A stretch of 64,000 nucleotides of DNA, taken from contig NZ_JMCB01000008.1 in NCBI RefSeq assembly GCF_000737315.1, positions 525,980 to 589,979 of the forward strand. The letters run 5' to 3'. The first letter of the stretch is position 1; each line of letters begins with the position of its first letter. Positions 25,768 through 41,652 of this stretch are shown here, piece after piece. A model generated the notes under the pieces. It ran no database searches, had not been told where the DNA came from, and saw only the letters and a program-made list of their open reading frames with translations. This DNA is from Hyalangium minutum (lineage in GTDB: Bacteria; Myxococcota; Myxococcia; Myxococcales; Myxococcaceae). Position numbers and translations under genes: made by a program.

Positions 25768-28700
25768 ATGATGAGGCGCGCGAACTCCCCTCTTGTTGCC
25801 ACCCTGGCGCTCTTCCTGACGGCGGCCGCGCCTGATCCGCGAGCGACGCCGGTGCTCGACACCTTCGACGACCTCACGCCTTGGCGGGTGGCGGCGTCGG
25901 ATGGCGTCTCCGTCTCGAAAGCGCCGGTGCCGGGTGCGCAGGGCGGTGCGCTCCGGCTGTCCTTCAACCTAGGCCCATCCGCCGGCTACGCCTTCGCTCG
26001 CCAGGACCTTCCGCTCTGCCTGCCGGACAACTTCGAGCTCGCCTTCCTCGTGCGCGGCGAGGCAGCACCCAACAATCTCGAGTTCAAGCTGGTAGACGCC
26101 AGCGGCGACAATGTCTGGTGGCATGTCCGGCGCGACTTCCAGTTCAGCCGCGAGTGGCGCGAAGTGCGCATCAAGAGACGCCAGATCTCCTTCGCCTGGG
26201 GTCCCCTTGAGGACAAGACCCTGCGCTGTACCGCAACGCTCGAGTTCGTGGTCAGCGCGGGCAGTGGCGGCGGCGCGGGATGGATAGAGATAGACCAGCT
26301 CATGCTCCGGCACCTCCCGGCTGATTCCGGAACTCCGCCGCCGATCACCGCGAGCGCCACAACTGCGAACGGCCTTGCGCCACTCGCCGTCGACAACGAT
26401 CCAGCGACCGCATGGCGCAGTCCTGCACCGGCCCGCGATCCACAGATACTGACGCTCGATCTCGGCCGCATGCGCGAATTCGGTGGGCTCTCGCTCCTGT
26501 GGCTGCCGGGCGCTCACGCGCGCGATTACGACATCGAGCTCTCGGACGAGGGGCTCCACTGGCGCCTGCTGCGCCGCGTGCACGGTGGAGACGGTGGCGA
26601 AGACCCGATCATGGCGACGGAGTCGGAGGCCCGTTTCATCCGGATCCGCATGCAGAACCCCGCCGGGCAGGGCTTCGGGCTCGCGGACATTCGCGTCGAG
26701 CCGCTTCAGTTTGGCGCCGATGCGAACGCCTTCCTCACGGAGCTGGCCCGCCGGGCGCCGCGCGGCCTCTATCCGCGAGGATTCGCCGGTCAGCAGACCT
26801 ACTGGACGCTGATAGGCGTCAAGAGTGGCGGCGACGGCGCGCTCTTGTCCGAGGACGGCGCACTGGAGATCGGCCGCGGCGGCGTTTCCATTGAACCCTT
26901 CGTCATTGAGGCGGGCCGCCTCACAACCTGGGCGGACGCGGCAATCGCGCATCGCCTCGCGGACAACGCTCTGCCAATCCCTTCGGTGGAGTGGACACGT
27001 CCCTCCTGGAAGCTGACGGTGGCCGCCTTCGTGGCGGGTGAGCGCGGAAACGAACGTCTCGTTGGCCGCTACACGCTGAAGAACCTCACCGGCGCACCGC
27101 TCTCGCTGCGTCTTGCCCTGGCTGTCCGTCCGCTGCAAGTGAATCCTCCCACGCAGTTTCTGACAACGCCGGGCGGCATCAGTCCGATCCGCACGATGTC
27201 GTGGGACGGCACGGTGATGAGCGCGGGCCTGCGCCGCATCTACCCGCTCCAGCGCCCGGACATGGCGAGCGTCTCAACCTTCGACAGCGGCGCCTATCCT
27301 CAACGCCTCATGAGGGCTGATGCCGCGGGCGAACGCGCGGCCGAGGACGAGACGGGCCTTGCCTCTGGGGTACTTGCCTACGATGTCGTCCTGCCGCCAG
27401 ACGGAGAGAAGCGCCTGGGCATTGTCGCACCGCTGACGGGCAACACTCAGGCCCTGCCAAGTGCGGCACCCGACAGCTGGCTCGATGAAGAGGAGGCACG
27501 CGTCGCCGCCTTCTGGCGGAAGGAGCTCTCCAGCGCCGTGGTTGAGGCAGCCGGCGAAGGGCGCGAGGTGACCAACGCCCTGCGCACCTCGCTCGCGCAC
27601 ATGCTCATCATGCAGGACGGGCCGATCCTGCGTCCTGGAGCACGGTCCTATGCGCGCTCCTGGATCCGCGACGGCGCGATGATCGCCGAGGCGCTCCTGC
27701 GTCTGGGTCACGCGGAGGAAGCCAAGGCCTATCTGCGCTGGTACGCAACGCACCTGTTCGCCAACGGCAAGGTCCCCTGCTGCGTCGATAAGCGCGGAGC
27801 CGATCCCGTTCCGGAGAATGACAGTCACGGCGAGTTCATCCACCTCGCGGCGGAAGTCTGGCGCTACACCGGCGACCGTGCCCTGCTTCAGTCCGTCTGG
27901 CCGAAGGTGGCAGCGGCGGCGGAGTACATGAATCAGCAGCGCCTCTCCGAGCGCACACCGGCCCATCTCGCCACGCCCGAGCGGCGCAACCTCTACGGGC
28001 TCATGCCGCCCTCCATCTCGCATGAAGGCTATTCAGCGAAGCCCGCCTACTCCTACTGGGACGATTTCTGGACGCTGCGAGGCTTCGAGGACGCCGTCAT
28101 GCTCGCGGCGGCGTTCGGCGATCCTATGACACGGACGCGCCTTGCCGCTCAGCGCGATGAATTCCGCACCGATCTGATGAAGTCCCTTCGTCTGACCGCG
28201 GACCGGTTCAAGATTCCCTATATCGCCGGTGCCGCCGACCTGGGCGACTTCGACGCCACCTCGACGACGATCGCGCTCTCGCCCGGCGGACTCCGCCGTC
28301 AGCTGCCCTCGGATCTCCTGGAAGGAACGTTCGATCGCTACTGGCAGAACTTCGTGGCGCGCCGCGATGGCGCTACCTCATGGAAGGATTACACGCCTTA
28401 TGAATGGCGCGTGGTGGGCGCGTTTGTCCGCCTCGGGAGCCGCGACCGGGCCAGACAGGCCCTCGATTTCTTCATGAACGATCGCCGCCCGCTCGCTTGG
28501 AACCAGTGGGCGGAGGTCGTCGGCCGCGAACCGCGCGAGCCACGCTTCATCGGCGACATGCCGCACGGCTGGGTTGCCTCCGACTACATCCGCTCAGCGC
28601 TGGACCTCTTCGTGTATGAGCGGCGCGACGACAGCGCGCTCGTGCTCGCGGCTGGCGTTCCAGAGAGCTGGCTGCGCGGTGACGGCGTACGTCTCGAGAA

Positions 28701-28935
28701 TTACCGTACGCCGTGGGGAGCGCTGAGCCTCTCCATGCAAGCGGAGGGTGATCGGCTGACCATTCGCCTCCAGGGCACCGCCCGGCCACCTGGCGGTTTC
28801 GTCATTCCCGCTGATCTCTTCGGCCCTTCCGACGCGCTCGTCGACGGCCGGCGCGCGAAGTGGAGCGGCGCTGAGCTCAAGGCCGCGCGCGCTCCGGCGG
28901 TCATCGTCCTCACCCGCCGGAAGGGAGGTCCCTGA
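25768..28935 (+). CDS. Secreted discoidin (F5/8 type C) domain six-hairpin glycosidase
   Basis: Signal peptide; AVDNDPATAWRS..LTLDLG discoidin motif; YARSWIRDG (alpha/alpha)6 glycosidase motif. Confidence 0.8.
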   Translation: MMRRANSPLVATLALFLTAAAPDPRATPVLDTFDDLTPWRVAASDGVSVSKAPVPGAQGGALRLSFNLGPSAGYAFARQDLPLCLPDNFELAFLVRGEAAPNNLEFKLVDASGDNVWWHVRRDFQFSREWREVRIKRRQISFAWGPLEDKTLRCTATLEFVVSAGSGGGAGWIEIDQLMLRHLPADSGTPPPITASATTANGLAPLAVDNDPATAWRSPAPARDPQILTLDLGRMREFGGLSLLWLPGAHARDYDIELSDEGLHWRLLRRVHGGDGGEDPIMATESEARFIRIRMQNPAGQGFGLADIRVEPLQFGADANAFLTELARRAPRGLYPRGFAGQQTYWTLIGVKSGGDGALLSEDGALEIGRGGVSIEPFVIEAGRLTTWADAAIAHRLADNALPIPSVEWTRPSWKLTVAAFVAGERGNERLVGRYTLKNLTGAPLSLRLALAVRPLQVNPPTQFLTTPGGISPIRTMSWDGTVMSAGLRRIYPLQRPDMASVSTFDSGAYPQRLMRADAAGERAAEDETGLASGVLAYDVVLPPDGEKRLGIVAPLTGNTQALPSAAPDSWLDEEEARVAAFWRKELSSAVVEAAGEGREVTNALRTSLAHMLIMQDGPILRPGARSYARSWIRDGAMIAEALLRLGHAEEAKAYLRWYATHLFANGKVPCCVDKRGADPVPENDSHGEFIHLAAEVWRYTGDRALLQSVWPKVAAAAEYMNQQRLSERTPAHLATPERRNLYGLMPPSISHEGYSAKPAYSYWDDFWTLRGFEDAVMLAAAFGDPMTRTRLAAQRDEFRTDLMKSLRLTADRFKIPYIAGAADLGDFDATSTTIALSPGGLRRQLPSDLLEGTFDRYWQNFVARRDGATSWKDYTPYEWRVVGAFVRLGSRDRARQALDFFMNDRRPLAWNQWAEVVGREPREPRFIGDMPHGWVASDYIRSALDLFVYERRDDSALVLAAGVPESWLRGDGVRLENYRTPWGALSLSMQAEGDRLTIRLQGTARPPGGFVIPADLFGPSDALVDGRRAKWSGAELKAARAPAVIVLTRRKGGP

Positions 28936-28961
28936 CCCGGCGGACCGGCGGGCGCAGAGGA

Positions 28962-28993
28962 CGAATAGGAAACGGGTTGAGGGTGAGGGCTGG
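28962..28993 (-). mobile_element. IS91-like terminus remnant
   Basis: CGAATAGGAAACGGGTTGAGGGTGAGGGCTGG shares TGAGGGTGAGGGCTGG with 32146 and its start with 24013. Confidence 0.5.
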
Positions 28994-29252
28994 AGGCGTG
29001 CTCGAATCGTAGTGTTGCCACCGCAGGCCGGCCGCTTCGCCGAGCTGGTGCTCAGTGAGGATGCAGGGGGGAGGTTGCCACGAGATCCGCGAGGTGCGCA
29101 TCCCGGAAGAGCGCCTTGGTGAGCCGCGCCTCCCTCTCCTTCGTGAGGGGGCCGGGGAGAGGGGGAGCGCGCACCTCCTCCTCTCCTCATGGCAGAGGGG
29201 TGGGCGCTGGCCCCCGGCGTGGCCAATGTTGTGGCGAAAGAGGATTCTCCCC

Positions 29253-29825
29253 ATGGCCACACTCGCTCCTCCTCCTCCAGCTTCGGGCGTCCTTGCGCAC
29301 GGTCTGCCAGCCGGTACGCTCGCACCCGAGCTGGACCTTCTATCCACCCCTGATGGGCGACGGGTCAAGCTCTCGGACCAGAAGGGCTCCCCCGCCGTCC
29401 TCGTCTTCTACCCGGGGGACTTCACCCCTGTCTGCACCAACGAGCTGGGGCTCTTCAACGAGCTGATGCCCGTGTTCGGCCAGTTCGGCGCGAAGGTGTT
29501 CGGCATCTCGTGCGACTCCCTCTGGAGCCACATCGCCTTCGCCAAGGAGCTCCACATCCAGATTCCGCTCCTCTCCGACTTCCATCCGAAGGGAGAGGTC
29601 TCGCGCCGCTACAACATCTACCGGGAGGACGTCGGCATCTGCGAGCGGGCGCTCTACGTTATCGACGGCAAGGGCGTCATCTACTGGAGCTACGTCTCGC
29701 CCATCGAGCTCAACCCCGGCGCGGACGGCGTCATCGACGCGCTCGAGCGGCTGACCGGCAAGCAGATGGAGTTCCCCACCTTCCAGCCACAGCAGCAGCC
29801 ACTTCAGCCGGAGGCCCGGCCATGA
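29253..29825 (+). CDS. Peroxiredoxin (AhpC/TSA family)
   Basis: VFYPGDFTPVCTNE peroxidatic motif. Confidence 0.9.
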   Translation: MATLAPPPPASGVLAHGLPAGTLAPELDLLSTPDGRRVKLSDQKGSPAVLVFYPGDFTPVCTNELGLFNELMPVFGQFGAKVFGISCDSLWSHIAFAKELHIQIPLLSDFHPKGEVSRRYNIYREDVGICERALYVIDGKGVIYWSYVSPIELNPGADGVIDALERLTGKQMEFPTFQPQQQPLQPEARP

Positions 29826-30424
29826 GCAGACTTCGTAGAGGCGTGGACGCCAATGACTGGGCGCGGGGGCCGGCCGATGCCCCCGTCACCCTCCTGGAGT
29901 ACGGCGACTTCGAGTGTCCCTTCTGTGGGCGCGCCTTCTGGGAGCTGAAGCGGCTTGAGAGCGCTGTCGGAGATCGGGTCCGCTTCGTCTCCCGCCACTT
30001 CCCCCTCACCCAGCTCCACCCGCACGCGCTGCTGGCCGCGGAGGCCGCGGAGACCGCCGGCGCGCAGGGAAAGTTCTGGGAGATGCACGACATGCTCTTC
30101 CAGAACCAGCAGAACCTGGAGGCTCCCGCGCTGCTGACGTACGCGGCCGACCTGGGGCTCGACATGGGCCGCTTCACTCGCGACCTCCAGGAGCACCGCT
30201 GCCTGCCGAAGGTCCAGCGCGACTTCATCGAGGGCGTGCGCAGTGGCGTGAACGGTACCCCGACCTTTTTCATCAACGGGGAGCGCCACAACGGCGCCTA
30301 CACGGCCGAAGCGCTGCTCGCCGCCATCGAGCAGCGGATGGGGCCCGACATCGAGCCGATGACGGGGCTTCCCTGGGAAGGCGGTCGCGTGCCGCGCATG
30401 GGCCGGCCCCATTCGCGCATGTAG
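29822..30424 (+). CDS. DsbA-like thioredoxin-fold protein
   Basis: YGDFECPFCG CxxC and GVNGTPTFFING cis-Pro loop; ATGA overlap with the peroxiredoxin gene. Confidence 0.9.
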   Translation: MSRLRRGVDANDWARGPADAPVTLLEYGDFECPFCGRAFWELKRLESAVGDRVRFVSRHFPLTQLHPHALLAAEAAETAGAQGKFWEMHDMLFQNQQNLEAPALLTYAADLGLDMGRFTRDLQEHRCLPKVQRDFIEGVRSGVNGTPTFFINGERHNGAYTAEALLAAIEQRMGPDIEPMTGLPWEGGRVPRMGRPHSRM

Positions 30425-30724
30425 GGGGCGCAGGGGCCCCGTGACGGCATCGCAACGAGAGTCCTCGGGGGCGAGCGCGAGCGTGAAGCGCGCGGACCAG
30501 CGGTACATGGGCCGCGGCTCCCCGCCGCACGACGGCCCCGACGACGGGACGCTGCCCATCCTCCTGCACGAGTCCGCAGGCAGCAGACACCAGGGCAGGC
30601 CCTGCAGTGCGTCGGTCCCCCTCCCGCCGCGCGTCCGGCTCCCTCTGTGAGGCGGGTTGTCATGACGTGCGTTCCTGCCAAGGCTTGTCGAGGACTACTG
30701 CAATGCCATGCACAGGGAGACACC

Positions 30725-31867
30725 ATGAAGGCACTCGTCTACGAGGGACCGCGCAAGGTCAGTGTGAAAGAAGTGCCGGACGCGAAGATTGAGCGGCCCA
30801 CCGATGTAGTGGTGCGCATTCGCAGTACCAACATCTGCGGCTCCGACCTGCACATGTACGAAGGCCGCACCGACATGGAGTCGGGCCGGGTGCTCGGGCA
30901 CGAGAACCTCGGAGAGGTGGTCGAGGTCGGCTCGGCGGTGGACAAGCTGAAGGTGGGCGACTGGGTGGCCGTTCCCTTCAACGTCAGCTGTGGCCACTGC
31001 GAGAACTGCGAGCACGGCCTGACCGCCTTCTGCCTCAACGCCAACCCGTCGGGGACGGCCGGCGCCGCCTACGGCTTCGCAGACATGGGGCCCTACAATG
31101 GCGGGCAGGCCGAGTACCTGCGCGTGCCCTGGGCCGACTTCAACTGCCTGCGGCTGCCAGAGGACGCCGAGGAGAAGCAGCTCGACTACGTGATGCTCGC
31201 CGACATCTTCCCCACCGGCTACCACGTCACCGAGCTCGCCGGGCTCATGCCGGGCGAATCCGTCGTCATCTTCGGTGGAGGGCCCGTGGGACAGATGGCC
31301 GCGCTCTCCGCCACCATCAAGAGCGCGAGCAAGGTGATGGTCGTCGACTGCCATCCGGACCGGCTCGCTCTTGCCGAGAAGATTGGCGCCATCCCCATCG
31401 ACTACTCGAAGGTGGACCCCGTCGAGCGGGTGAAGGAGCTCACCCACGGCAAGGGCGCCGACCGCGGCTGCGAGTGCGTGGGCTACCAGGCGCACGACCC
31501 GCAGGGGAGGGAGCACCCCAACCTGACGATGAACAACCTGGTGAAGGCGGTGAAGTTCACCGGCGGCATCGGCGTGGTGGGCGTCTTCATCCCCAATGAC
31601 CCCGGCGGCCCGGACCCCCTGGCCAGGCAGGGTGAAATCGTCTTCGACTGGGGCATGCTCTGGTTCAAGGGGCAGCGCGTGGCGACCGGCCAGTGCAACG
31701 TGAAGGCCTACAACCGCCAGCTGCGCGAGCTCATCCACCTGGACAAGGTGAAGCCCTCGTGGATCGTCTCGCACACGCTCCCGCTCGACAAGGCGCCGGA
31801 CGGCTACCTGCACTTCGACAAGCGCGACAGGGGATGGACCAAGGTCGTCCTGCAGCCGGCCGCATGA
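30725..31867 (+). CDS. Glutathione-independent formaldehyde dehydrogenase-like Zn-dependent dehydrogenase
   Basis: ICGSDLHMYEGRT, GHENLGEV, CGHCENC..C, GGQAEYLRVPWADFN, DIFPTG. Confidence 0.9.
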   Translation: MKALVYEGPRKVSVKEVPDAKIERPTDVVVRIRSTNICGSDLHMYEGRTDMESGRVLGHENLGEVVEVGSAVDKLKVGDWVAVPFNVSCGHCENCEHGLTAFCLNANPSGTAGAAYGFADMGPYNGGQAEYLRVPWADFNCLRLPEDAEEKQLDYVMLADIFPTGYHVTELAGLMPGESVVIFGGGPVGQMAALSATIKSASKVMVVDCHPDRLALAEKIGAIPIDYSKVDPVERVKELTHGKGADRGCECVGYQAHDPQGREHPNLTMNNLVKAVKFTGGIGVVGVFIPNDPGGPDPLARQGEIVFDWGMLWFKGQRVATGQCNVKAYNRQLRELIHLDKVKPSWIVSHTLPLDKAPDGYLHFDKRDRGWTKVVLQPAA

Positions 31868-32124
31868 GCCGGCGCTAAGGCGAGGGAAGGAAGGGGCCGC
31901 TTGATGGGCCCCCAGGGCCTCGCGAACCGCGCGTTCGGCGACCAGCCCGACGAGCCGCTTCTAGGCGGGATAGAAGCCATGTTGAGGGTGGAGCGCACCC
32001 CAGTGGGGGCCTTACTTCTGCCGGGGCGCTGAACGCCAAGGGCTGCGGGGCCGCCATCCTGGCGGGCTTCTACCGAGCCAGCATGCGAGCCTGGACACGC
32101 GCTGGCTCTACAGATTCCAGGTTC

Positions 32125-32628
32125 TAAGACAGATAGGAGCTGTGCTGAGGGTGAGGGCTGGTGCAGAGGGGCCGAGGAGGGCCGAGGACGACCGCAGAGG
32201 GGGACATGTGGGCTGTGTGCCAAGCCGGTGGAGAGGCCGCGCAGCCACTTTGAGGTACACGCCTACCCCAGCCGCCTTCCCAGGAGGGGCGCGGCAGGTG
32301 CCTGGCTCTCTTGGCTGGCTGGGGCGGCTTGAGCTTCAACACCACGCGCTCTGGGGCGGCCCTCGCGCAGGGGCCAGGTGCTCACTCGCCGGGGGCAACC
32401 CCAGGTGCTCCACTATCGCTCTCACCCCTCCTGCTCCCTTCACAGACGCCAACACCCTTAAGCCTGCCTCCACACCTCAAGCACGCCAACACTTCCAGGG
32501 CGAACCTCCTTTTCAGCAACCCGGCCCAGTTCAAACGGGGTGTGCGCTCCTTCCTCGGCTCCTCCCCCGTCGCGGCAAAGGCGGGGCTCTCTTCCGTAAG
32601 CCCCGGCTCCGCCCCTGCTTGAGGGAGC
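32125..32628 (-). mobile_element. IS91-like terminus plus transposase 3' remnant
   Basis: PRKERTPRLNWAGLLKRRFALEVLACLRCGGRL; terminus TAAGACAGATAGGAGCTGTG and internal GGTACACGCCT..AGCCGCC.TCCCA shared with 20890-21040. Confidence 0.75.
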
Positions 32629-32902
32629 GCCTCGGGCGACAGGTGCGCGTACTTCATTATCGAACGGCGGCTATTTTTAGGTGCGCCGTAGAGTGCTTCC
32701 GCAGCCGACCCGGGCAGGTCCACGCTCCTTTCTCGTCCCCTTGGGCAGCCCCCACGCCACACCAAGCCGTCCGGCGCACGTTGATCAGGCGCCCGGATTC
32801 CTCACGGGATTAGACGGCGCCATCTTGCCAACCCAACAGTGCCTTGATGCCCTAGAAAAGCATCAGCTACTCAATAGACCATAGGGCGGGTATATTGCTC
32901 TT

Positions 32903-35089
32903 ATGATCCATGTGGACCGCAGTCGCGTCTCTCCTCCACCGAAGTTTTTCGCGGCGGCTCAATCTCTTCTCGATAAGTCACGGCTTTTTTTCAACAATCC
33001 AGATAGCCTCAGGAGCCAAAGCCGCCCCGCCATCTTCGGCCAATTCGTCAACCTAAAGAATGTGGTGCGACCTGCTCTAATCGAACTATTCCACGGCAAG
33101 TGCGCCTATTGTGAATCGAGTGTCGCAGCCACAGGAAGTACCGCAGTGGATCACTTTCGTCCGAGGATGGATGCTGCAAACCTTGATAGGAAGATTTCGC
33201 CCATCCACTATTGGTGGCTGATGGCCACTTGGGACAATCTCTATCTGGCATGCCTTGAGTGCAATCGATACAAGCGCAACCTTTTTCCGGTGCGCCACCA
33301 ACGGGCTGTTCCCGAGAGCTTTGGACAAGCACTTGAGTCAGAAGGCCGGTTGCTTATCGATCCTTGCAACGACGAGCCCGAACAATCCTTCGCCTTTCAG
33401 CCCAATGGTCAAGTAGAGCCTCTTGATGAACACGCCAAGGTAACCATTGAAGTGCTGCAGCTCAATCGCCCTAGTCTTGTCCACATGAGACGGGATCATT
33501 ATGCTCGCATCACACAGGAACTCGGCCTCTGGATATCTAGCCAGAGGCAGACAAGCGTGTCAGGCGATGATCGGCTTGAGGCTGGACTTCGAGATAGGCT
33601 TTTAAGCTATACGCACAGCAGCGCTCCCTATGCAGCCGTTGCGCGGCAGGCACTTAGGCACGTTCTCCATCGCCTGCGAGGAGATGCTCTCCATACGGAA
33701 GTCCCTCCGGCACAGAAGAAAATCAGGCGAGGGCATCAAATCCCTCGAAAGCTGGAAAAAGCAGCTGAATCGCTCCGAACAGGGTGGATCTCGCGAATAG
33801 AAATAGAGAACTTCCGCGGCATCGACTCCCTTGCACTTGACTTTCCTCGTCTAGAGCATCGAGATTTCCTTGTAGACGACGAGATGACAGCAATAGCTTC
33901 GCCTAGCGAGACAGAAGACCCTGACATACGCCGCGAACCATGGCTGATGCTAATTGGCCCGAACGGTGTCGGGAAGAGCAGTGTCCTCAAAGCGGTCGCT
34001 CTAGCCCTCGTAGATGAGCCAACTCGAAACCGTCTCATTCCTGATGCCTCTTCAGTGCTCAACCAGCGCTCGCGCAGTTCCACCGGTGTCGTATTTGTGC
34101 GCTTTGACAATGGTGAGTCCGTCAGAATTTCTTTCAGTCGACGGTCTCGTACATTTCGGCAGCAAGGAGGCAGAGCACACTCTCCATTGCTTGCTTATGG
34201 TTCAACCAGGCTCCTCTCGCCGGGCACTGCACGTCTCGAACGACCGCGTAGCGTGCGCGTTGATAATCTTTTCCACCCAAGAACTCTGCTCGGCGATGCA
34301 GAGAAGTGGCTTGCCGATACTAGCCAACTCTTAGATAGCGGCTTTGACCTTCTGGCCCGCTCACTCAAAGATCTCCTCTCTCTAGATGATGAGGACCGCG
34401 TCATCCGTCAGAATGGCCGCCTGCTCATAGAGATGTCGGGTTCCCGGATTCCTCTGCACGAACTGAGCGATGGCTACCAGTCCATTGTTGCACTAGCCAC
34501 TCATATCATGGTGAACCTCTCACGAGGCGGCTTTGCACTGGAGCATGTAGCAGGAACGGTACTACTTGATGAACTTGAGGTTCACCTCCACCCAACTTGG
34601 AAAATACGTATTGTGCGCAGTTTAAGGCGAGTTTTTCCTCGGGTCCGATTCATTACAACTACTCATGATCCGCTTTGTCTAAGAGGCTTGGAATCAGGCG
34701 AGGTCTACCACCTTGATCGGGAACCAGAGTCGAAAAGGGTGCGAGCCATTCAATTGGACGTGCCGCCTGGCTTGCGTGTGGATCAACTCCTGACTGGCCA
34801 ATGGTTCGGTTTGAGTTCAACTCTCGATGCAGACACGTTGGCTCTTATGGAGAAACACCAGAGCCTACTCGCGCGACGAAGACTCAGCGCAACGGAGCAA
34901 CTCCAACTTGAGCAATTGAGCAACGAACTGCAAAGTCGCCTTAGCACTTTTGCCGATACATCTCTTGACCGCATGGCGCTGAGCGTCGCAGCACAACTCA
35001 TGGCCAGCACATCAACTCCGCTGACCCCAGATGAACGAACAAGGCTTCGTGAAGGAATTCGTCAAGCTCTGTCGGAAAAGGCTCCTTGA
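32903..35089 (+). CDS. HNH nuclease (PtuB/TIGR02646-like) fused to ABC-type ATPase (PtuA-like)
   Basis: N-term KCAYCE..VDHFRP..WDNLYLACLECN..LLIDPC..LQLNR; C-term ISRIEIENFRG, GPNGVGKS, LSDGY, LLDELEVHLHP, TTHDP. Confidence 0.85.
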   Translation: MIHVDRSRVSPPPKFFAAAQSLLDKSRLFFNNPDSLRSQSRPAIFGQFVNLKNVVRPALIELFHGKCAYCESSVAATGSTAVDHFRPRMDAANLDRKISPIHYWWLMATWDNLYLACLECNRYKRNLFPVRHQRAVPESFGQALESEGRLLIDPCNDEPEQSFAFQPNGQVEPLDEHAKVTIEVLQLNRPSLVHMRRDHYARITQELGLWISSQRQTSVSGDDRLEAGLRDRLLSYTHSSAPYAAVARQALRHVLHRLRGDALHTEVPPAQKKIRRGHQIPRKLEKAAESLRTGWISRIEIENFRGIDSLALDFPRLEHRDFLVDDEMTAIASPSETEDPDIRREPWLMLIGPNGVGKSSVLKAVALALVDEPTRNRLIPDASSVLNQRSRSSTGVVFVRFDNGESVRISFSRRSRTFRQQGGRAHSPLLAYGSTRLLSPGTARLERPRSVRVDNLFHPRTLLGDAEKWLADTSQLLDSGFDLLARSLKDLLSLDDEDRVIRQNGRLLIEMSGSRIPLHELSDGYQSIVALATHIMVNLSRGGFALEHVAGTVLLDELEVHLHPTWKIRIVRSLRRVFPRVRFITTTHDPLCLRGLESGEVYHLDREPESKRVRAIQLDVPPGLRVDQLLTGQWFGLSSTLDADTLALMEKHQSLLARRRLSATEQLQLEQLSNELQSRLSTFADTSLDRMALSVAAQLMASTSTPLTPDERTRLREGIRQALSEKAP

Positions 35090-35092
35090 GTC

Positions 35093-35923
35093 ATGGACCG
35101 CTTCCCGCGTCCCTCTAAGCCAAGAGGTTTTGATGCTTCGGTCAAGGCACACAAGGATCGAGTTCAATCTCACTTCAAGAAAAAGAAGCCGGGCAAATGG
35201 AAGTTTGAGGATATTTGGAGCAAGTACAAGCGGAACATCGCAGTCGCCTCACATGGAAAATGTGGCTACTGTGAAGTACGCGTTACTGGCTCCCAACATG
35301 GAGACGTCGATCACTTCTACCCTAAGGGAGAAGTGTGGGCACTCCATGATGACCGTACCAAATGGGGTCAAGAGATTCCTGGGCTATCTAAAGTCAAAGG
35401 GAGAAAAAAGAAGCTCCTTTCGCGCAGAGGCTACTGGTGGCTAGTCTACGAATGGAAGAACTACGTACTGGCATGCCTTGTGTGTAATCAGCAATGGAAA
35501 CTCTCGTTCTTTCCGGTACGTGCCAAGCGCCGCAAACTTCCTCCTTTGCCGCGTAGTAAAGAGAAACCCCTACTGCTAAACCCTTTCTTTGGTCCAGATC
35601 CAGTGAGGCACCTTCAATTCATCATTACAGGTGCAATCATTCCCTATAAAGGTAGCCGTTACGGTTTCGAGACTATCAGAACATGCGGGCTAGATCGCCC
35701 CAGTCTTACTCTCGATAGACATGAAAAAGCACAACGGGCCTACTATCTCCTCAAGAAGTTGACGACGTGTTTGCCGACGACTCCCGAGTATGACCTCACG
35801 CTCAAAGACTTTTTCCTTATGGGAAGAAAGGAAAATGTTCACTCTGGAATGATCCGCGCCATCTTTGAACAGGAGACTGCTATGAAGTGGAAGCAGCTTG
35901 AGAAACGGTTCGCTATCCCCTAG
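35093..35923 (+). CDS. HNH nuclease (PtuB/TIGR02646-like)
   Basis: KCGYCE..DVDHFYPK..YWWLVYEWKNYVLACLVCN..LLLNP..GLDRPSL; 3 bp after the ATPase stop; AT-rich. Confidence 0.85.
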   Translation: MDRFPRPSKPRGFDASVKAHKDRVQSHFKKKKPGKWKFEDIWSKYKRNIAVASHGKCGYCEVRVTGSQHGDVDHFYPKGEVWALHDDRTKWGQEIPGLSKVKGRKKKLLSRRGYWWLVYEWKNYVLACLVCNQQWKLSFFPVRAKRRKLPPLPRSKEKPLLLNPFFGPDPVRHLQFIITGAIIPYKGSRYGFETIRTCGLDRPSLTLDRHEKAQRAYYLLKKLTTCLPTTPEYDLTLKDFFLMGRKENVHSGMIRAIFEQETAMKWKQLEKRFAIP

Positions 35924-36157
35924 CACCTACCCTGGGGTGCGGTTGCCACGATAGGCGAGGCAGATCTTAACAGGTGTAAGTGGTGGCCCTTATGCTGGAG
36001 CAATTGACGCAGGCCGTTATCAGGCCTTCCACGAAGAAAAGCCTGATGCACAAACAGATTGCTCGCCAGTTGGGCATTTGAGAGATCATCGTCAACGCAT
36101 AGACGGGATAAGTGGCCACGCACTCCCCGGACGCATGTGCCTCCAGTGTGCCTTGCT

Positions 36158-36182
36158 GAGGGTTCGATTCCCACCGCCTCCA
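36158..36182 (+). repeat. tmRNA 3'-end copy (att-like remnant 5)
   Basis: GAGGG-TTCGATT-CCCAC-CGCCTCC-A preceded by a very short arm relic GCATGTGCCTCCAGTGTGCC. Confidence 0.7.
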
Positions 36183-36344
36183 TTCTGAGAAGCCCAGCAA
36201 ACTTGATGATGGAGAAGCGGGCGTCCCGGCTCAGCCCACCTCGTCTCTGGAGGCGCTGGTCCACAGCGTCACGGAGTGAAAACCGGCCGACGGGGAATTC
36301 TCACGGAGTTGGGAGCGACGCGTGAGGGCCGTGCAGGGCTCAGT

Positions 36345-36398
36345 GCATAGGAAGGACAGGAGCCCTCTTGGGCGTAGCGGGCGGGAGCAGAGCGGGAG
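36345..36398 (-). mobile_element. IS91-like terminus copy
   Basis: GCATAGGAAGGACAGGAGC..TTG..CGGGCGGGAGCAGAGCGG aligns with 20887-20938. Confidence 0.7.
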
Positions 36399-36554
36399 GA
36401 TTGCCCCTGTTGGGCCGCATGTGCCCCCGGTGTAACCCTCCAGCGGGGAATGGAACGGGACGAGACGGGACGGAGCGGAGGAACGATCCACTGTGAGATC
36501 AAGGCATTAGCCGGTAACAGCGCGACCTGCTTGGGGTTTTGCTTCCGCCTTAAT
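36399..36554 (+). repeat. Shared att arm, full-length copy
   Basis: Near-identical to 18513-18668. Confidence 0.85.
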
Positions 36555-36578
36555 GCGGGTTCGATTCCCGCCGCCTCC
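36555..36578 (+). repeat. tmRNA 3'-end copy (att-like remnant 6)
   Basis: GCGGG-TTCGATT-CCCGC-CGCCTCC. Confidence 0.8.
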
Positions 36579-36700
36579 CTCCCGAGAGGCCTCGCAATCT
36601 CACCGGGTTGCTGGGCTTTCTCTTGGGCCTCGTGACTCCGGCGTCTCTGGCCGGAGCGGCGTGGAGCTGGGGCACGGTGTTCGACGCGGGCGCTTGATGC

Positions 36701-37312
36701 TCAGTACAGCGTCGCCTTCACCCGGCCGGGCAACTCGCGGTCGTACTCGCCGCCGTCGAAGTTATCCGGGCTCAGCGCCTCGAGGATGGAGCCGGGGCTT
36801 GGGAACTCGGCGCGGGTGACGTGCCGGGCCGGGTCCCAAAGCCTGGAGCGGACCAACGCGCGGCTGCATTGGAAGTAGACCGTCTCCACGGTGATGCGCA
36901 GCACGGAGCGCGGCGCCTTCCCATCGAAGGTGAAGCGCTCCAGCATGGACGGCTCGATGACGATGCTCGCCCGGCCGTTGACACGCAGGGTTTCGTTCAC
37001 GCCCGGGACGAAGAACAGCAGCGCGACGCGCGGATCCGCCAGGATGTTCCGCAGCGAGTCCATGCGGTTGTTGCCTCGGCGATCGGGCAGCAGCAGCGTG
37101 CGCGTGTCCTCGATGACCACGAACCCGGCGGGGTCTCCTCGCGGCGAGGCATCCAGCCCTCCAGGGCCGGACGTGGCGAGGACCATGAACGGCGATCGCT
37201 CGATGAAGGGCCGGTATGCGGGGTGGAGGTGGTCCACCTCCTTGAGCACGGACGACTTCCCGGGAACCCCGTACAGGCGTTCGAGCGTCTCCACATCGTT
37301 CACGGTCTTCAT
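36701..37312 (-). CDS. Pyridoxamine 5'-phosphate oxidase-like FMN-binding protein
   Basis: SPFMVLAT..DASPRGDPAGFV..LPDRRGNNRMDSLRNI..ETLRVNGRA..YFQCSRA. Confidence 0.9.
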   Translation of the reverse strand: MKTVNDVETLERLYGVPGKSSVLKEVDHLHPAYRPFIERSPFMVLATSGPGGLDASPRGDPAGFVVIEDTRTLLLPDRRGNNRMDSLRNILADPRVALLFFVPGVNETLRVNGRASIVIEPSMLERFTFDGKAPRSVLRITVETVYFQCSRALVRSRLWDPARHVTRAEFPSPGSILEALSPDNFDGGEYDRELPGRVKATLY

Positions 37313-37428
37313 CCGAGGGCGCCTCCTGGGTCCTTTTAGGCCTTTAAAATGGCCATGTCACACGCGGCATCGGCTGCGTCGTCCTGGGAATGGAAGGGCA
37401 CTTCGCCCCCCAGAACGAGGACCTGCAC

Positions 37429-37890
37429 ATGAAGCCCCGGATGAATGCCTTCGCGGTCGCGCCGGACGCCGTCAACCTCATGTTGGATTTCAGCAAGAAG
37501 GTGGAGGCCCTGGGGCTGGAGCCGAGCCTCCGCGAGCTCGTCAAGATCCGCTCGTCCCAGCTCAATGGCTGCGCCTTCTGCATCCACATGCACACCCGCG
37601 ACGCCCGCGCACATGGGGAGACCGAGGAGCGCATCTACCTTCTGGACGGCTGGCGTGAGTCGCCGCTGTACACCGACCGCGAGCGGGCGGCCCTGGGCTG
37701 GACCGAGGCCCTGACGCTCGTCTCCACGACACATGCCCCGGATGAGGACTACGCTGCGCTCAAGCCGCACTTCACCGAAGAGGAGATCGTGAAGCTGACC
37801 CTCATGATTGGTGTCATCAACTCCTGGAACCGGTTCGCCATCGGCTTCCGGTCCATCCACCCGGTGACCGCTCGCAGTGAAGCCGCCTGA
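37429..37890 (+). CDS. Carboxymuconolactone decarboxylase/AhpD family protein
   Basis: ELVKIRSSQLNGCAFCIHMH CxxC motif; WRES..ERAAL..INSWNR. Confidence 0.9.
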   Translation: MKPRMNAFAVAPDAVNLMLDFSKKVEALGLEPSLRELVKIRSSQLNGCAFCIHMHTRDARAHGETEERIYLLDGWRESPLYTDRERAALGWTEALTLVSTTHAPDEDYAALKPHFTEEEIVKLTLMIGVINSWNRFAIGFRSIHPVTARSEAA

Positions 37891-38755
37891 TTCAAATCCT
37901 GCGGACGTCTTCGACCCGCTCCGCCCCCGGCTGCTCCGCATCGCGTACCGGATGCTGGGCATCGTCGCGGAGGCGGAGGACGTGGTGCAGGAGGCGTATC
38001 TGCGTTGGCACCAGACGAACCGCGACGTCGTGCGGGACGCCGAGGCCGTGCTCGTCCGCACGGTGACGCGCCTGTGCCTGGACGTCCTGAAGTCCGCGCG
38101 CGTGCGGCGCGAGGAGTACGTGGGGACCTGGCTTCCAGAGCCCATCCTCGAGACAGTGGAGGGCGATGACTTGACGCTGACCCTGATGATGGCCCTGGAG
38201 CGCCTGTCCCCGCTGGAGCGCGCCGCGTTCCTCCTGCACGACGTGTTCGGCATGGACTTCGAGCAGGTGGCGAAGGCGCTCGACCGCGCTCCCGCGGCGT
38301 GCCGCCAGCTCGCCAGCCGGGCGCGGGACCATGTGCAGGAGGCCCGGCCCCGCTTCCCCGTGACGGAGGCGAAGGGCCACGAGCTGGCCTCGGCGTTCCA
38401 TGCCGCGTCCCGGAGCGGCGACACGCAGGCGCTCCAGGCCCTGCTGGCCCAGGACGCCATCCTGTACGCCGACGGCGGCGGCAAGGTGAAGGCGGTCCTC
38501 AATCCCATCTACGGCCGGGAGAAGCTGGTGCGCTTCTTCGAAGGGGTGTGGCGCATTCCAGCCGTGGGCTCGGCGCAGCTCGTGCACGAGGGCACCATCG
38601 ACGGCCTGCCCGCGTACGTCACGATGGATCCGGATGGAATGCTGCAGACCACGGCGTTTGCCATCGAGGACGGCCGGATCGTCGCCCTCTACGTCACGCG
38701 CAACCCCGACAAGCTGAAGGGCATCCGGCGCGCGGTGGTGGGCGAGTCGTCCTAG
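37877..38755 (+). CDS. ECF sigma-70 factor, SigJ/ECF41 type with SnoaL-like extension
   Basis: AYRMLG..AEDVVQEAYLRW, YVGTWLPEP, ERAAFLLHDVF, DGGGKV, RNPDKL. Confidence 0.9.
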   Translation: MKPPDSNPADVFDPLRPRLLRIAYRMLGIVAEAEDVVQEAYLRWHQTNRDVVRDAEAVLVRTVTRLCLDVLKSARVRREEYVGTWLPEPILETVEGDDLTLTLMMALERLSPLERAAFLLHDVFGMDFEQVAKALDRAPAACRQLASRARDHVQEARPRFPVTEAKGHELASAFHAASRSGDTQALQALLAQDAILYADGGGKVKAVLNPIYGREKLVRFFEGVWRIPAVGSAQLVHEGTIDGLPAYVTMDPDGMLQTTAFAIEDGRIVALYVTRNPDKLKGIRRAVVGESS

Positions 38756-38907
38756 GAGGCTTCAGCGCGCGGCGAAGAACTCGCGCGCGAAGGTTACAAA
38801 AGTCTCACTGGTGAGACTTGGCCGCCTGTGGGATTCCAGCGGTAGCGGTTCGAGAGAGCTGGGGACGCTCCGGCATCATCCTCCCCGGAGTACAGTGGGC
38901 ACTCCCG

Positions 38908-39790
<883 letters not shown>

Positions 39791-39795
39791 GCAGG

Positions 39796-39831
39796 GTGCT
39801 CAACGCCTTTCGGCATCACGGCAAGGGGGAC
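39796..39831 (+). CRISPR. Solitary 36-bp CRISPR-type repeat (no array, no cas genes in the window)
   Basis: GTGCTCAACGCCTTTCGGCATCACGGCAAGGGGGAC with a GCC-TTTC-GGC hairpin; matches my recall of a myxobacterial type I repeat except near the 3' end. Confidence 0.6.
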
Positions 39832-40296
39832 CCTGCCAGCTAACCCGGCCCCGCCCAGGGGACTGAGTGCTCTCCCTTCAGGTGCGTGGCAGGCGCCGAG
39901 GCCTGTGGGGTGTCTTGAGCGCCTCAACACCCCGCTGCCTTATGGGGCCCTCGCGCCGGCGCCAGCCTCTCACCTGCCGTGGCCAGGCCCAGGTGCTTCA
40001 CCATCACGCAGCGTCACGGGACAGCGTGACGGTCACGCGTCCGATGGAGGCAGCGCGGAGCACCGCTGGAACTCCGGCGGAGTCCTCACGGATATCGACT
40101 GGCCATCCTGCGCCAGTCCGCAGCGCGGCGCTACGTGGGGGGCGCAGGGACGTGGCGAGTGTCCAGCCGTCAGCCTCGGGCGCGAGGCCGCCCCCGCAGG
40201 GTGCCCGGAGGTGAAGGACAGTACCACCCGGTGGCTCCTCCTCTTCTCCGTGTCTGCCCTCTACCCTGATCCCCTCCTCGCAAGAGCGGGTGACAC

Positions 40297-41652
40297 ATGC
40301 TGCCATGGCGGATGCTCTGGAAGGCCGAAGCGCTGTTCCTTGCGTTGTTGGTGGGGTGCGCCAGCGTCCCTCGGGTCCCCGTCGTGGAAGACATCGGCCA
40401 GGGTATGGCCGTCGTCCACGTGCCCCGCACCGCTGACCTGCACCCGGTGGAACTGGAGGAAGAGGAATTCCAGCAGGCGGTGAGGCGCCTTGCGCGCGAG
40501 GTGCGGCTGACAGGCACGCCGCGCCAAACGGCGGAGCGGGCTTTTCAAATGGGCCCGCAGAGCGGCTACTACCACTACCTGATGCGGGAAAAGAAGATGG
40601 CGCCAGATGGGCCCGGTGAGTCCTGGGACGGCACGTTGACGAAAGAAGACTTGGAGCTGGCGGAGCGCTATCGGCTCTGGTGCCAGAGCGCATACAACTT
40701 CTATGGAGATTGTCTTGGGGGCGCGCTGGTGGCAGGGCGCTACCTGGACATGCAAGGCCGCTACGTTTGGGCGCTGGCCATGAGCAAGAGCCCGGTGCTG
40801 GACGAGATGAAAAAGGCGCTCGGGGAGATGGTGGAGTTCCGCGCGCTCATCAGCGCGGCCCTGTGGACGTTGGGTTCGATGCTGCTGATCATGGCCCTGA
40901 CTCCCGTGGCGCCTGGGCTGGTGGCTGTGCTGGGCGTGGGGCTGCTCCTGTATGTGGGCTATGACACGCTCCACAACCTCGTGACGGGCTGGGCTGAGTT
41001 GACGGAGGCGGCAGAGGCCGCGACCACCTTCGAGCAGCTCCGCGAGGCGGGCGAGAGGTTCGGGAAGATCATCGGGCGAGAGGCGGCGCGCGCGTTCGCC
41101 ATGCTGCTGGTTGCGGCGATTGGCTCCACGGCGCAGCTGTTCGCGGCGAAGGTGCCGACGCTGCCCGGCTCGGCTCAGGTGGCCATGCAGGCCGAGGGGC
41201 AGGCAGGATTCTCGCTGCCCGCGCTGGGGGCTGTGCAGGAGATCGCGGTGGCTGCCGAGGGCGTGAGTATCACGCTTCCCGCGAACGCGGTGGCGATGGC
41301 GGCGCGGGGCAGTGGCGGCAAGGCTCCTTGTGTCGAGACGCACCACATCGCCACCATCTGCAACGACACGTCCACCGCACGCGGGGGCGCGTGGACACCG
41401 CGGTTCCGGAAGGTCTTCGCCAAGGCGGGAATGTCGATGGAGAATCCTGCGAACAAGATGCCTCTGCAGGGGCATTACGGCCCGCACCCCGAGCGGTATC
41501 ACCAGATAGTCTTCAATGCACTGGATGACGCGACGCGGACCTGTCGCAGCGTCGTCACGTGCCGGGCGAAGCTGATGGAGGCCCTCAAGGATCTGGCTCA
41601 GGACATCGCAACCCCGGGAACAGAGCTGAACCAACTCGTCACCCGGCAGTAG
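40297..41652 (+). CDS. SitA-like lipoprotein polymorphic toxin with C-terminal AHH nuclease
   Basis: LLVGC lipobox; hydrophobic central helices; ETHHIAT..GGAWTPRF..PANK..GHYGPHPERYH AHH signature. Confidence 0.85.
   Translation: MLPWRMLWKAEALFLALLVGCASVPRVPVVEDIGQGMAVVHVPRTADLHPVELEEEEFQQAVRRLAREVRLTGTPRQTAERAFQMGPQSGYYHYLMREKKMAPDGPGESWDGTLTKEDLELAERYRLWCQSAYNFYGDCLGGALVAGRYLDMQGRYVWALAMSKSPVLDEMKKALGEMVEFRALISAALWTLGSMLLIMALTPVAPGLVAVLGVGLLLYVGYDTLHNLVTGWAELTEAAEAATTFEQLREAGERFGKIIGREAARAFAMLLVAAIGSTAQLFAAKVPTLPGSAQVAMQAEGQAGFSLPALGAVQEIAVAAEGVSITLPANAVAMAARGSGGKAPCVETHHIATICNDTSTARGGAWTPRFRKVFAKAGMSMENPANKMPLQGHYGPHPERYHQIVFNALDDATRTCRSVVTCRAKLMEALKDLAQDIATPGTELNQLVTRQ

What the first reader, a model, noticed from the sequence alone, without database searches (positions are those of the whole stretch)
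32903..35923. Septu-like locus with an HNH-ATPase fusion plus a second HNH nuclease
Seen: gene 1 has a full PtuB-like HNH domain fused N-terminally to a PtuA-like ABC ATPase; gene 2 is another, divergent PtuB-like HNH 3 bp downstream; both are visibly AT-richer than the flanks. Established: canonical Septu is one ATPase plus one separate HNH gene, sometimes controlled by a type I-A retron. Inference: a variant with two nuclease subunits, one covalently tethered and no retron, implying different stoichiometry or activation.
Basis: partly seen in the sequence, partly recalled or inferred. Interest (0 to 1): 0.75.

Follow-up and report, generated by a model that had tools for sequence, protein, structure and literature searches.

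The report
Septu defence operon with fused PtuB-PtuA
This is a two-gene Septu anti-phage locus whose ATPase carries a built-in copy of its partner nuclease; the layout is real but common across bacteria, already picked up by defence-finder profiles, and the built-in copy has usually lost its catalytic residues in relatives.

Summary
Gene 1 (32903-35089, 728 aa) is a complete PtuB-like HNH module, a linker, and a PtuA ABC ATPase. Gene 2 (35093-35923, 276 aa) is a separate PtuB, 3 nt downstream. Both lie in an islet of about 50-55% GC inside a chromosome of 66-70% GC. No reverse transcriptase or retron RNA is nearby.

The layout is not unusual. PADLOC-DB already holds three full-length 'PtuA' profiles that match gene 1 end to end (best E = 7e-171). 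A profile search found 6,486 50%-identity clusters at E <= 1e-30. In 78 of 78 related genomic loci with sequence downstream, the fusion is followed directly by a free PtuB. No third gene is conserved.

The main new result is an asymmetry. The free PtuB keeps its HNH catalytic residues in 120 of 120 relatives, and the ATPase motifs are likewise invariant. The fused copy keeps its zinc cysteines but has the essential His in only 43-56% of relatives, and a full catalytic set in about 30%. The window's copy belongs to that intact minority.

Verdict: an ordinary member of a widespread retron-less Septu subfamily that has not been explicitly described. The 'two active nucleases' reading is possible here but is not the family's logic.

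The parts
32750..36050 (.). Low-GC islet (about 0.49-0.55 GC) that carries the two genes, inside 0.65-0.72 GC chromosome. Probably horizontally acquired.
   Evidence: Composition profile. The borders are approximate.
32903..35089 (+). Gene 1: PtuB'-PtuA fusion, 728 aa (full PtuB paralogue, linker, ABC ATPase, C-terminal helical extension).
   Evidence: ORF. PADLOC PtuA HMMs: PDLC00292 E = 7e-171; PDLC00288 covers 1-718 against 1-717 of 733. More than 120 full-length homologue clusters. AF2 model pLDDT 78.9. The Foldseek top 50 hits are all PtuA chains.
32903..33682 (+). Fused PtuB-like module (residues 1-260): an HNH ββα-metal core plus a three-helix C-terminal domain.
   Evidence: PADLOC PtuB PDLC00339 over 1-254 against 1-256 of 261, E = 7.8e-45. 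hhalign against the free-PtuB family: probability 100%, E = 8.6e-44. The A1 profile hits solved PtuB 22bv_F with positions 51-248. Helices at 190-217, 222-237 and 244-259.
33101..33274 (+). HNH motif of the fused module: C67-x2-C70-E71, D83-H84, N112, C117-x2-C120-N121, K124. All are present in the window's copy.
   Evidence: Alignment A1, censuses, translation 'DHFRPR' at 33149-33166. H84 aligns with the catalytic His57 of Ec78 PtuB (PMC12804668).
33683..33775 (+). Predicted disordered linker (residues 261-291) between the PtuB' module and the ATPase.
   Evidence: pLDDT below 50 for 261-291. The region is variable and gapped in A1.
33776..34828 (+). PtuA-type ABC ATPase head (residues 292-642). 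Motifs: Walker A G352-S359 (33956-33979); signature L521-S-D-G-Y; Walker B V553-L-L-D556-E557 followed by HLHP (34556-34594); H-loop H588.
   Evidence: Pfam AAA_21 349-591. PDB PtuA 8EE4 E = 1.5e-15 for the single sequence and 6e-32 for the A1 profile. Motifs are invariant in 119-120 of 120 relatives. Translations.
34829..35080 (+). C-terminal helical extension of PtuA (residues 643-726, four predicted helices). This is the region that clamps PtuB's C-terminal domain in solved PtuAB complexes.
   Evidence: Secondary structure of the model. The role is inferred from the PtuA CTE / PtuB CTD interface described in PMC12819146 and PMC12804668. It was not tested here.
35093..35923 (+). Gene 2: free PtuB HNH nuclease, 276 aa, 3 nt after gene 1. 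Motif: C57-x2-C60-E61, D73-H74, N123, C128-x2-C131-N132, K136.
   Evidence: ORF. PADLOC PtuB E = 3.1e-39. The A2 profile hits PtuB chains. AF2 pLDDT 94.6 and 11 Foldseek hits, all PtuB. Catalytic residues are 120 of 120 conserved. 'DHFYPK' at 35309-35326.

Best explanation
This is a stand-alone (retron-less, PADLOC 'type I') Septu anti-phage operon. It belongs to a large subfamily in which PtuA carries an entire PtuB paralogue (PtuB') at its N-terminus and is always followed by a separate ptuB gene.

Proposed mechanism:
1. The ABC ATPase heads dimerise or oligomerise around ATP. All ATP-site motifs are invariant.
2. The C-terminal helical extensions of a PtuA pair hold the helical C-terminal domain of the free PtuB, as in solved PtuAB complexes.
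3. The free PtuB is the obligatory effector nuclease. In studied Septu systems the target is DNA nicking or tRNA-Tyr cleavage; the target here is unknown.
4. The conserved job of the fused PtuB' is non-catalytic. It keeps the zinc-knuckle fold, the invariant Asn and basic residues, but usually not the general-base His or the third-position Asn. It most likely acts as a nucleic-acid-binding, sensing or autoregulatory module, for example by competing for the PtuB docking site.
5. In this particular locus PtuB' still has a complete catalytic set, so it may additionally cut.

The operon sits in a roughly 3.3-kb low-GC islet acquired horizontally by a high-GC, myxobacterium-like chromosome.

Shown: the identity of the domains, the family-wide layout, the conservation asymmetry, and the absence of a retron. 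Inferred: complex architecture, which nuclease acts, the role of PtuB', and the defence function itself.
For: - Domain identity.
- Layout conserved in 78 of 78 loci with downstream sequence, spanning Bacteroidota, Actinomycetota, Acidobacteriota, Gemmatimonadota, Proteobacteria and Sulfurovum.
- No conserved third gene.
- Free PtuB: His, Asn, Asn and Lys in 78 of 79 genomic loci and 120 of 120 cluster representatives.
- Fused PtuB': Cys and N112 at 100%, but His in 45 of 81 and 52 of 120; third-position Asn in 39 of 81 and 53 of 120 (54 of 120 counting Asn or His); both intact in 23 of 81 and 36 of 120.
- ATPase Walker A Lys, Walker B Asp-Glu, signature and H-loop in 119-120 of 120.
- The aligned His is the residue whose mutation abolishes function in studied PtuBs: H57 in Ec78 (PMC12804668) and H75 in Septu EcB88 (PMC13096335).
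- Low GC. No RT or retron RNA.
Against: - No experiment on any member of this fusion subfamily was found in the searchable literature, so defence activity and the division of labour are inferred.
- About 30% of fused copies, including this one and its nearest relative P0002, keep a full catalytic set. Catalysis by PtuB' may therefore matter in some lineages.
- The model gives no inter-domain contacts, so docking or competition of PtuB' is speculation.
- The PtuB and PtuA NCBIfam equivalogs (Ec78 type) score far below their cut-offs. The proteins are distant from every structurally studied PtuAB (13-19% identity in Foldseek alignments).
Confidence: 0.65

Rival explanations
1. One reading: both HNH modules are active nucleases, and both are required. 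That would give a Septu variant with two kinds of nuclease subunit, for example one nicking each strand or one cutting DNA and one cutting tRNA.
For: In the window, both copies have the full C-x2-C / D-H / N / C-x2-C-N / K set. About 30% of family members, mostly Bacteroidota plus this clade's nearest relative P0002, keep both catalytic positions in the fused copy.
Against: The general-base His is replaced by R, Q, L, W, A, P and others in 44-57% of fused copies, while the same proteins keep every ATPase motif and their partners keep every HNH residue. Dual catalysis therefore cannot be the conserved logic of the architecture.
Confidence: 0.25
2. The fused HNH is the real effector, and the free gene 2 product is a regulator, an antitoxin-like partner or a decoy.
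For: Covalent tethering would guarantee 1:1 delivery of a nuclease to the ATPase. OLD and GajA proteins are ATPase-nuclease fusions.
Against: The conservation pattern is the opposite. The free PtuB is catalytically invariant in 120 of 120 relatives and the fused copy is not.
Confidence: 0.04
3. The pair is not an anti-phage system in this host. It could be a selfish addiction or mobility module of a mobile element, or an inactive relic of one.
For: It lies in a small low-GC islet next to tRNA-like 3'-end repeats. There is no experimental evidence for this subfamily.
Against: Both ORFs are intact with every functional motif. There is strong homology to validated Septu components. Family members are found next to or embedded in other defence genes, for example an Hma-like trio in 9 loci (Payne et al., bioRxiv 10.1101/2024.01.29.577857). 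No integrase or transposase domain was detected at the borders.
Confidence: 0.06

Closest known systems
Septu type I (stand-alone PtuAB; E. coli structures 8EE4, 8EE7, 8EEA, 8SUX; Doron et al. 2018; Li et al. 2024)
   Same: It is a two-gene, co-directional ptuA-ptuB operon without a retron. PtuA is an ABC ATPase whose best PDB sequence match is 8EE4. PtuB is a TIGR02646-type HNH with a helical C-terminal domain. PADLOC PtuA1 and PtuB1 profiles match both genes.
   Different: PtuA here is 728 aa against 465 aa, because a whole PtuB paralogue plus a linker precedes the ATPase. Identity to the solved proteins is only 13-19%. Each PtuA protomer therefore brings its own PtuB-like module, so the 6:2 PtuA:PtuB picture cannot simply be transferred.
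Retron type I-A / Septu type II (Ec78/Eco7, Ec83, Vc95: RT + ncRNA + PtuA + PtuB)
   Same: The PtuA and PtuB folds are the same: the top Foldseek hits for both genes are Ec78 and Ec83 chains. The catalytic His aligns with Ec78 PtuB His57.
   Different: There is no RT and no msr/msd RNA. The retron-specific PtuA N-terminal domain is replaced by a PtuB paralogue. The NCBIfam Ec78 equivalogs score 81 against a cut-off of 500 (PtuA) and 54 against 150 (PtuB).
OLD / Gabija GajA (ABC ATPase covalently fused to a TOPRIM nuclease)
   Same: An ABC ATPase and a nuclease-fold domain share one polypeptide in a defence context.
   Different: The nuclease fold is HNH, not TOPRIM. It is N-terminal, not C-terminal. 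It is duplicated as a separate gene, and it is catalytically degenerate in most family members.

Membership tests
Septu type I (stand-alone PtuAB) | PtuA: ABC-type ATPase with Walker A, signature, Walker B and H-loop | tested here: met
   Motifs GPNGVGKS, LSDGY, LLDE and THD are present and invariant in relatives. Pfam AAA_21 E = 1.1e-19. PDB PtuA 8EE4 E = 1.5e-15 for the single sequence and 6e-32 for the A1 profile. Foldseek top 50 are all PtuA.
Septu type I (stand-alone PtuAB) | PtuB: HNH nuclease of the TIGR02646 type with a helical C-terminal domain | tested here: met
   Gene 2: PADLOC PtuB E = 3.1e-39. The profile hits PtuB chains at about 1e-5. The model (pLDDT 94.6) matches only PtuB chains. 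The catalytic H74, N123 and N132 are intact. The curated TIGR02646 and NCBIfam PtuB cut-offs are not reached.
Septu type I (stand-alone PtuAB) | ptuA immediately followed by ptuB on the same strand | tested here: met
   A 3-nt gap in the window. The same order is seen in 78 of 78 related loci.
Septu type I (stand-alone PtuAB) | Recognised by the profiles used to call Septu (PADLOC PtuA1 + PtuB1) | tested here: met
   PDLC00292 E = 7e-171, PDLC00288 E = 2.1e-145, PDLC00291 E = 6.1e-104, all full length. PDLC00339 for gene 2. The PADLOC system-rule program itself was not run.
Septu type I (stand-alone PtuAB) | The PtuA C-terminal extension binds the PtuB C-terminal domain; defined PtuA:PtuB oligomer | not testable with these tools
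   Only secondary structure is available: helices 643-726 in gene 1 and 203-273 in gene 2. No multimer prediction was possible.
Septu type I (stand-alone PtuAB) | Protects against phage; depends on the ATPase and HNH motifs | not testable with these tools
   Needs phage-challenge assays.
Retron type I-A / Septu type II | Retron reverse transcriptase gene adjacent to ptuAB | tested here: not met
   No RVT-domain gene among the called genes within +/-10 kb. No conserved third gene in 80 related loci.
Retron type I-A / Septu type II | msr/msd non-coding RNA | tested here: not met
   No retron RNA family hit in 28000-41000 at E <= 1.
NCBIfam PtuA / PtuB (retron Ec78 equivalogs NF041760 / NF041761) | Score above the curated equivalog cut-off | tested here: not met
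   81.1 bits against 500, and 54.4 and 23.7 bits against 150.

The most novel reading that the evidence does not exclude
The PtuB'-PtuA fusion subfamily may be a mechanistically distinct Septu subtype. It comprises thousands of clusters and is currently lumped into 'Septu type I'. In this reading, a tethered and usually catalytically dead PtuB paralogue acts as a pseudo-nuclease sensor or autoinhibitor. For example, it could occupy the PtuB docking clamp, or hold nucleic acid, until a phage cue hands control to the free, active PtuB. Lineages like this one, which retain an intact fused HNH, would then represent an intermediate, dual-nuclease state.
Probability: 0.3. Interest if true: 0.55.

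Novelty: new member of a known kind. Interest (0 to 1): 0.33.

Why it matters
For this locus, little changes: it adds one more Septu system to a myxobacterial-type genome and would be called as Septu by existing tools.

The useful by-product concerns the family. A large and phylogenetically broad share of 'Septu type I' has a PtuA that carries a full PtuB paralogue. That paralogue's catalytic residues are under relaxed constraint, while the partner nuclease and the ATPase are strictly conserved. None of the structural or mechanistic Septu and retron I-A papers I could read mentions this. Their models (6:2 or 4:2 PtuA:PtuB, with PtuB docking on the PtuA C-terminal extension) therefore may not describe this subfamily.

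It is a clean, testable case of a pseudo-enzyme domain inside a defence complex, but it is an incremental variation on a known system rather than a new kind.

Tried and rejected
- tRNA/tmRNA scan of the whole window: no genes.
- Rfam around the locus: no retron or other relevant RNA. The only hits were a single CRISPR-repeat-like match and sub-threshold tmRNA fragments.
- I suspected integrase and IS91-like fragments in the minus-strand ORF 32382-32765, from remembered motifs. Pfam gave no support, so I dropped the idea.
- Promoter/terminator scan: nothing above shuffled expectation.
- phmmer of gene 2 alone, and of the fused module alone, against PDB sequences gave no significant hit. A family profile was needed.
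- Mapping the Q-loop residue, to judge whether the ATPase hydrolyses ATP or only binds it as reported for E. coli type I PtuA, failed because the alignments to solved PtuA do not cover that region. G433 (117 of 120) and R436 (120 of 120) after strand 429-432 are my guess for that site.
- Three key papers are not held: Li et al. 2024 (PtuAB structure), Krishnan et al. 2020 (ABC ATPase classification) and Doron et al. 2018. I therefore could not check whether they mention the fusion, or whether the originally validated Bacillus Septu systems are of this type.
- A conserved third gene was sought and not found. The 42- and 36-locus clusters are antisense ORFs inside the fusion gene itself.
Full report
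**1. What is in the sequence**

Two co-directional ORFs lie at the reported coordinates: 32903..35089 (728 aa) and 35093..35923 (276 aa), 3 nt apart. GC content falls to 0.49-0.55 between about 32750 and 36000, while the flanks are 0.65-0.72. Both start codons are supported by family-wide conserved N-termini, 'MIxVDR' for gene 1 and 'MxRFxRPxKP' for gene 2.

The window corresponds to NCBI assembly GCA_000737315.1, contig JMCB01000008.1. From memory, and unverified, this is a Hyalangium (myxobacterial) genome. The neighbouring genes fit that: Ser/Thr kinases, FHA-sigma54 activators, and an AHH/Imm11 toxin pair.

**2. Domain identity**

Gene 1:
- Residues 1-254 match PADLOC PtuB profile PDLC00339 over 1-256 of 261 positions (E = 7.8e-45).
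- Residues 343-707 match PtuA profiles. Pfam AAA_21 covers 349-591.
- The best PDB sequence match of the ATPase half is E. coli Septu PtuA 8EE4 (E = 1.5e-15; 6e-32 with the family profile), followed by retron Ec78 and Ec83 PtuA.
- The AlphaFold model (pLDDT 78.9, pTM 0.71) has a folded N-module, a disordered linker at 261-291, an ABC head, and four C-terminal helices at 643-726. Its 50 best Foldseek hits in the PDB are all PtuA chains.

Gene 2:
- It matches PADLOC PtuB at E = 3.1e-39.
- Its family profile reaches solved PtuB chains at about 1e-5.
- Its model (pLDDT 94.6) matches eleven PDB chains with probability 1.0, every one a PtuB.

The fused module is a complete PtuB paralogue, not just an HNH motif. 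Profile-profile comparison with the free-PtuB family gives probability 100%, E = 8.6e-44, over residues 1-251 against 1-257. This span includes the helical C-terminal domain. Pairwise identity is 32%.

**3. No retron, no third gene**

No RT-domain gene lies within +/-10 kb, and no retron RNA was found. Across 80 related loci the only recurrent genes are the fusion and the free PtuB. The two other large clusters are antisense ORFs inside the fusion gene. The next cluster is a methylase/helicase/ATPase trio upstream in 9 Bacteroidota loci. That resembles the Hma systems in which Payne et al. reported Septu to be embedded.

**4. The architecture is common and already captured**

- PADLOC-DB v2 contains three 'PtuA1|PtuA' HMMs of 726-773 positions that match gene 1 from end to end: PDLC00292 E = 7e-171, PDLC00288 residues 1-718 against 1-717 of 733, and PDLC00291. 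The fusion has therefore been part of the Septu profile set since at least 2023.
- A word-indexed search found more than 120 full-length clusters of 660-790 aa. JGI names many of them 'TIGR02646 family'.
- An exhaustive profile search of 1.84 billion representatives found 6,486 50%-identity clusters at E <= 1e-30. Nearly all of the best 150 are end-to-end matches.
Of these, 500 encode a relative by tblastn, and the best 80 were kept. The 80 span Bacteroidota, Actinomycetota, Acidobacteriota, Gemmatimonadota, Alpha-, Beta- and Gammaproteobacteria, and Sulfurovum.
- In 78 of those 80 loci, a PtuB-like ORF of 270-350 aa follows the fusion directly on the same strand. The remaining two loci, L013 and L032, end at the fusion gene.
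- The pair also occurs on 27 plasmids, including Rhizobium, Bacillus cereus group, Klebsiella and Gluconobacter. There it is annotated only as 'AAA family ATPase' plus 'hypothetical protein'. The B. cereus pRML01 copy even has the same 3-nt gap.

**5. The informative asymmetry**

The His of the 'D/E-H-F' motif aligns with His57 of Ec78 PtuB. That residue belongs to the catalytic dyad His57/Asn73 (PMC12804668). Mutating its counterpart H75 abolishes defence in E. coli Septu EcB88 (PMC13096335).

| Feature | 80 genomic loci plus the window | 120 protein clusters |
|---|---|---|
| Free PtuB: His | 78/79 | 120/120 |
| Free PtuB: first Asn | 78/79 | 120/120 |
| Free PtuB: third-position Asn | 78/79 | 120/120 |
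| Free PtuB: Lys | 79/79 | 120/120 |
| Fused module: four zinc cysteines | 79-81/81 | 120/120 |
| Fused module: first Asn (N112) | 81/81 | 120/120 |
| Fused module: His (H84) | 45/81 | 52/120 |
| Fused module: third-position Asn (N121) | 39/81 | 53/120 |
| Fused module: His and third position both intact | 23/81 | 36/120, counting Asn or His |

Where the fused module lacks His, it has R, Q, L, W, A, P and other residues. The same 120 fusion proteins keep the Walker A Lys, the Walker B Asp-Glu, the signature Ser/Gly and the H-loop His in 119-120 of 120.

Selection therefore maintains the ATPase site, the free nuclease's active site and the fold of the fused module, but not the fused module's catalysis. 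The window's protein (D83-H84, N112, N121, K124) and its nearest relative P0002 belong to the intact minority.

**6. Most likely mechanism**

Shown: this is a retron-less Septu operon of the PtuB'-PtuA subfamily, carried in a horizontally acquired low-GC islet.

Inferred from solved PtuAB complexes (PMC12819146, PMC12804668): ATP-bound PtuA heads dimerise or oligomerise, and a pair of C-terminal extensions clamps the helical C-terminal domain of the free PtuB. The free PtuB is the effector nuclease.

The fused PtuB' has the same three-helix C-terminal domain. There are thus more PtuB-type modules than clamps. The most economical hypothesis is that PtuB' is a tethered pseudo-nuclease that binds nucleic acid or regulates access to the clamp. 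In this locus it may still cut.

The substrate is unknown. Studied Septu systems nick DNA in an ATP-inhibited manner or cleave tRNA-Tyr. Whether this ATPase hydrolyses ATP could not be decided, because the Q-loop position could not be mapped.

**7. Comparison with the known, and novelty**

Every sequence-level membership feature of Septu type I that I could test is met. The retron I-A features (RT, ncRNA) are not met. The curated NCBIfam Ec78 equivalog cut-offs are not reached.

In the literature I could search, Septu is divided only into type I (stand-alone) and type II (retron), and no paper describes an HNH-fused PtuA. Three key papers could not be read.

The locus is therefore a new member of a known kind. 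The subfamily is catalogued implicitly by detection profiles, but as far as I could see it is not described or mechanistically studied.

**8. Verdict**

The claimed rarity and the 'two nucleases' logic do not hold at family level, and interest is modest. The conservation asymmetry is the one result worth passing on.

Noticed in passing
window 36150-36203 and 36547-36600; candidate element 36249-36581 (+): There are two 80%-identical copies of a tRNA/tmRNA-like 3' end (T-arm GGGTTCGATTCCC plus an acceptor strand), just downstream of the low-GC islet. The second copy closes a 333-nt sequence whose 5' GGAGGCG pairs with the 3' CGCCTCC in the MFE fold, giving a tRNA-like domain. There is no recognisable tag ORF. 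ARAGORN and Rfam do not call it; only sub-threshold tmRNA and permuted-tmRNA fragments appear. It could be a decayed ssrA-type attachment site or pseudogene marking where the islet integrated.
   Followed up: partly
window 39796-39831 (+): A single 36-nt match to Rfam CRISPR-DR23 (46 bits against a gathering score of 45), directly after the ORF 39101-39790. No second copy exists in the 64-kb window with up to 3 mismatches, so it is not an array. It is either an orphan repeat or a chance match.
   Followed up: partly
window 40297-41652 and 41673-42224 (+); also 39101-39790: An AHH-nuclease polymorphic toxin gene is followed by an Imm11 immunity gene (Pfam annotations on the called genes). The upstream ORF 39101-39790 has a faint Imm11-like match (E = 0.22) and may be an orphan immunity gene.
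   Followed up: no
L006 1651-6004, with equivalent positions in 8 other Bacteroidota loci; L083 1218-2462: In 9 related loci, a conserved trio sits immediately upstream of the fusion-type Septu: a methyltransferase-like protein of about 329 aa, a 671-aa protein and a 446-aa protein. In B. mycoides plasmid p37, a dcm methylase precedes it. This resembles the published embedding of Septu in Hma systems.
   Followed up: partly
window 33245-33266 and 35468-35489: A 22-nt direct repeat, 91% identical (CTGGCATGCCTTGAGTGCAATC and CTGGCATGCCTTGTGTGTAATC). It encodes the same 'LACLxCN' HNH motif in gene 1 and gene 2. This is either DNA-level similarity left between the paralogues or coincidence.
   Followed up: no
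window 33857-33913 (gene 1 residues 319-337): An acidic insertion (within ...DFLVDDEMTAIASPSETEDPDIRRE...) lies between the first beta-hairpin of the ATPase and the Walker A motif. It is absent or much shorter in most homologues and is predicted to be disordered (pLDDT below 50).
   Followed up: no
proteins P0142, P0146, P0154, P0160, P0164, P0165, P0181, P0182, P0184, P0229; P0104 and P0247: Some free-PtuB relatives are 407-424 aa rather than about 280 aa. Some fusion relatives are 884-941 aa, with the match split into two stretches. These suggest extra domains or insertions in parts of the family.
   Followed up: no
window 31868-32900: About 1 kb of high-GC sequence lies between the upstream alcohol-dehydrogenase-like gene and gene 1 with no called gene. 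The minus-strand ORF 32382-32765 contains motifs that reminded me of integrase and IS91 C-termini, but Pfam found nothing.
   Followed up: partly
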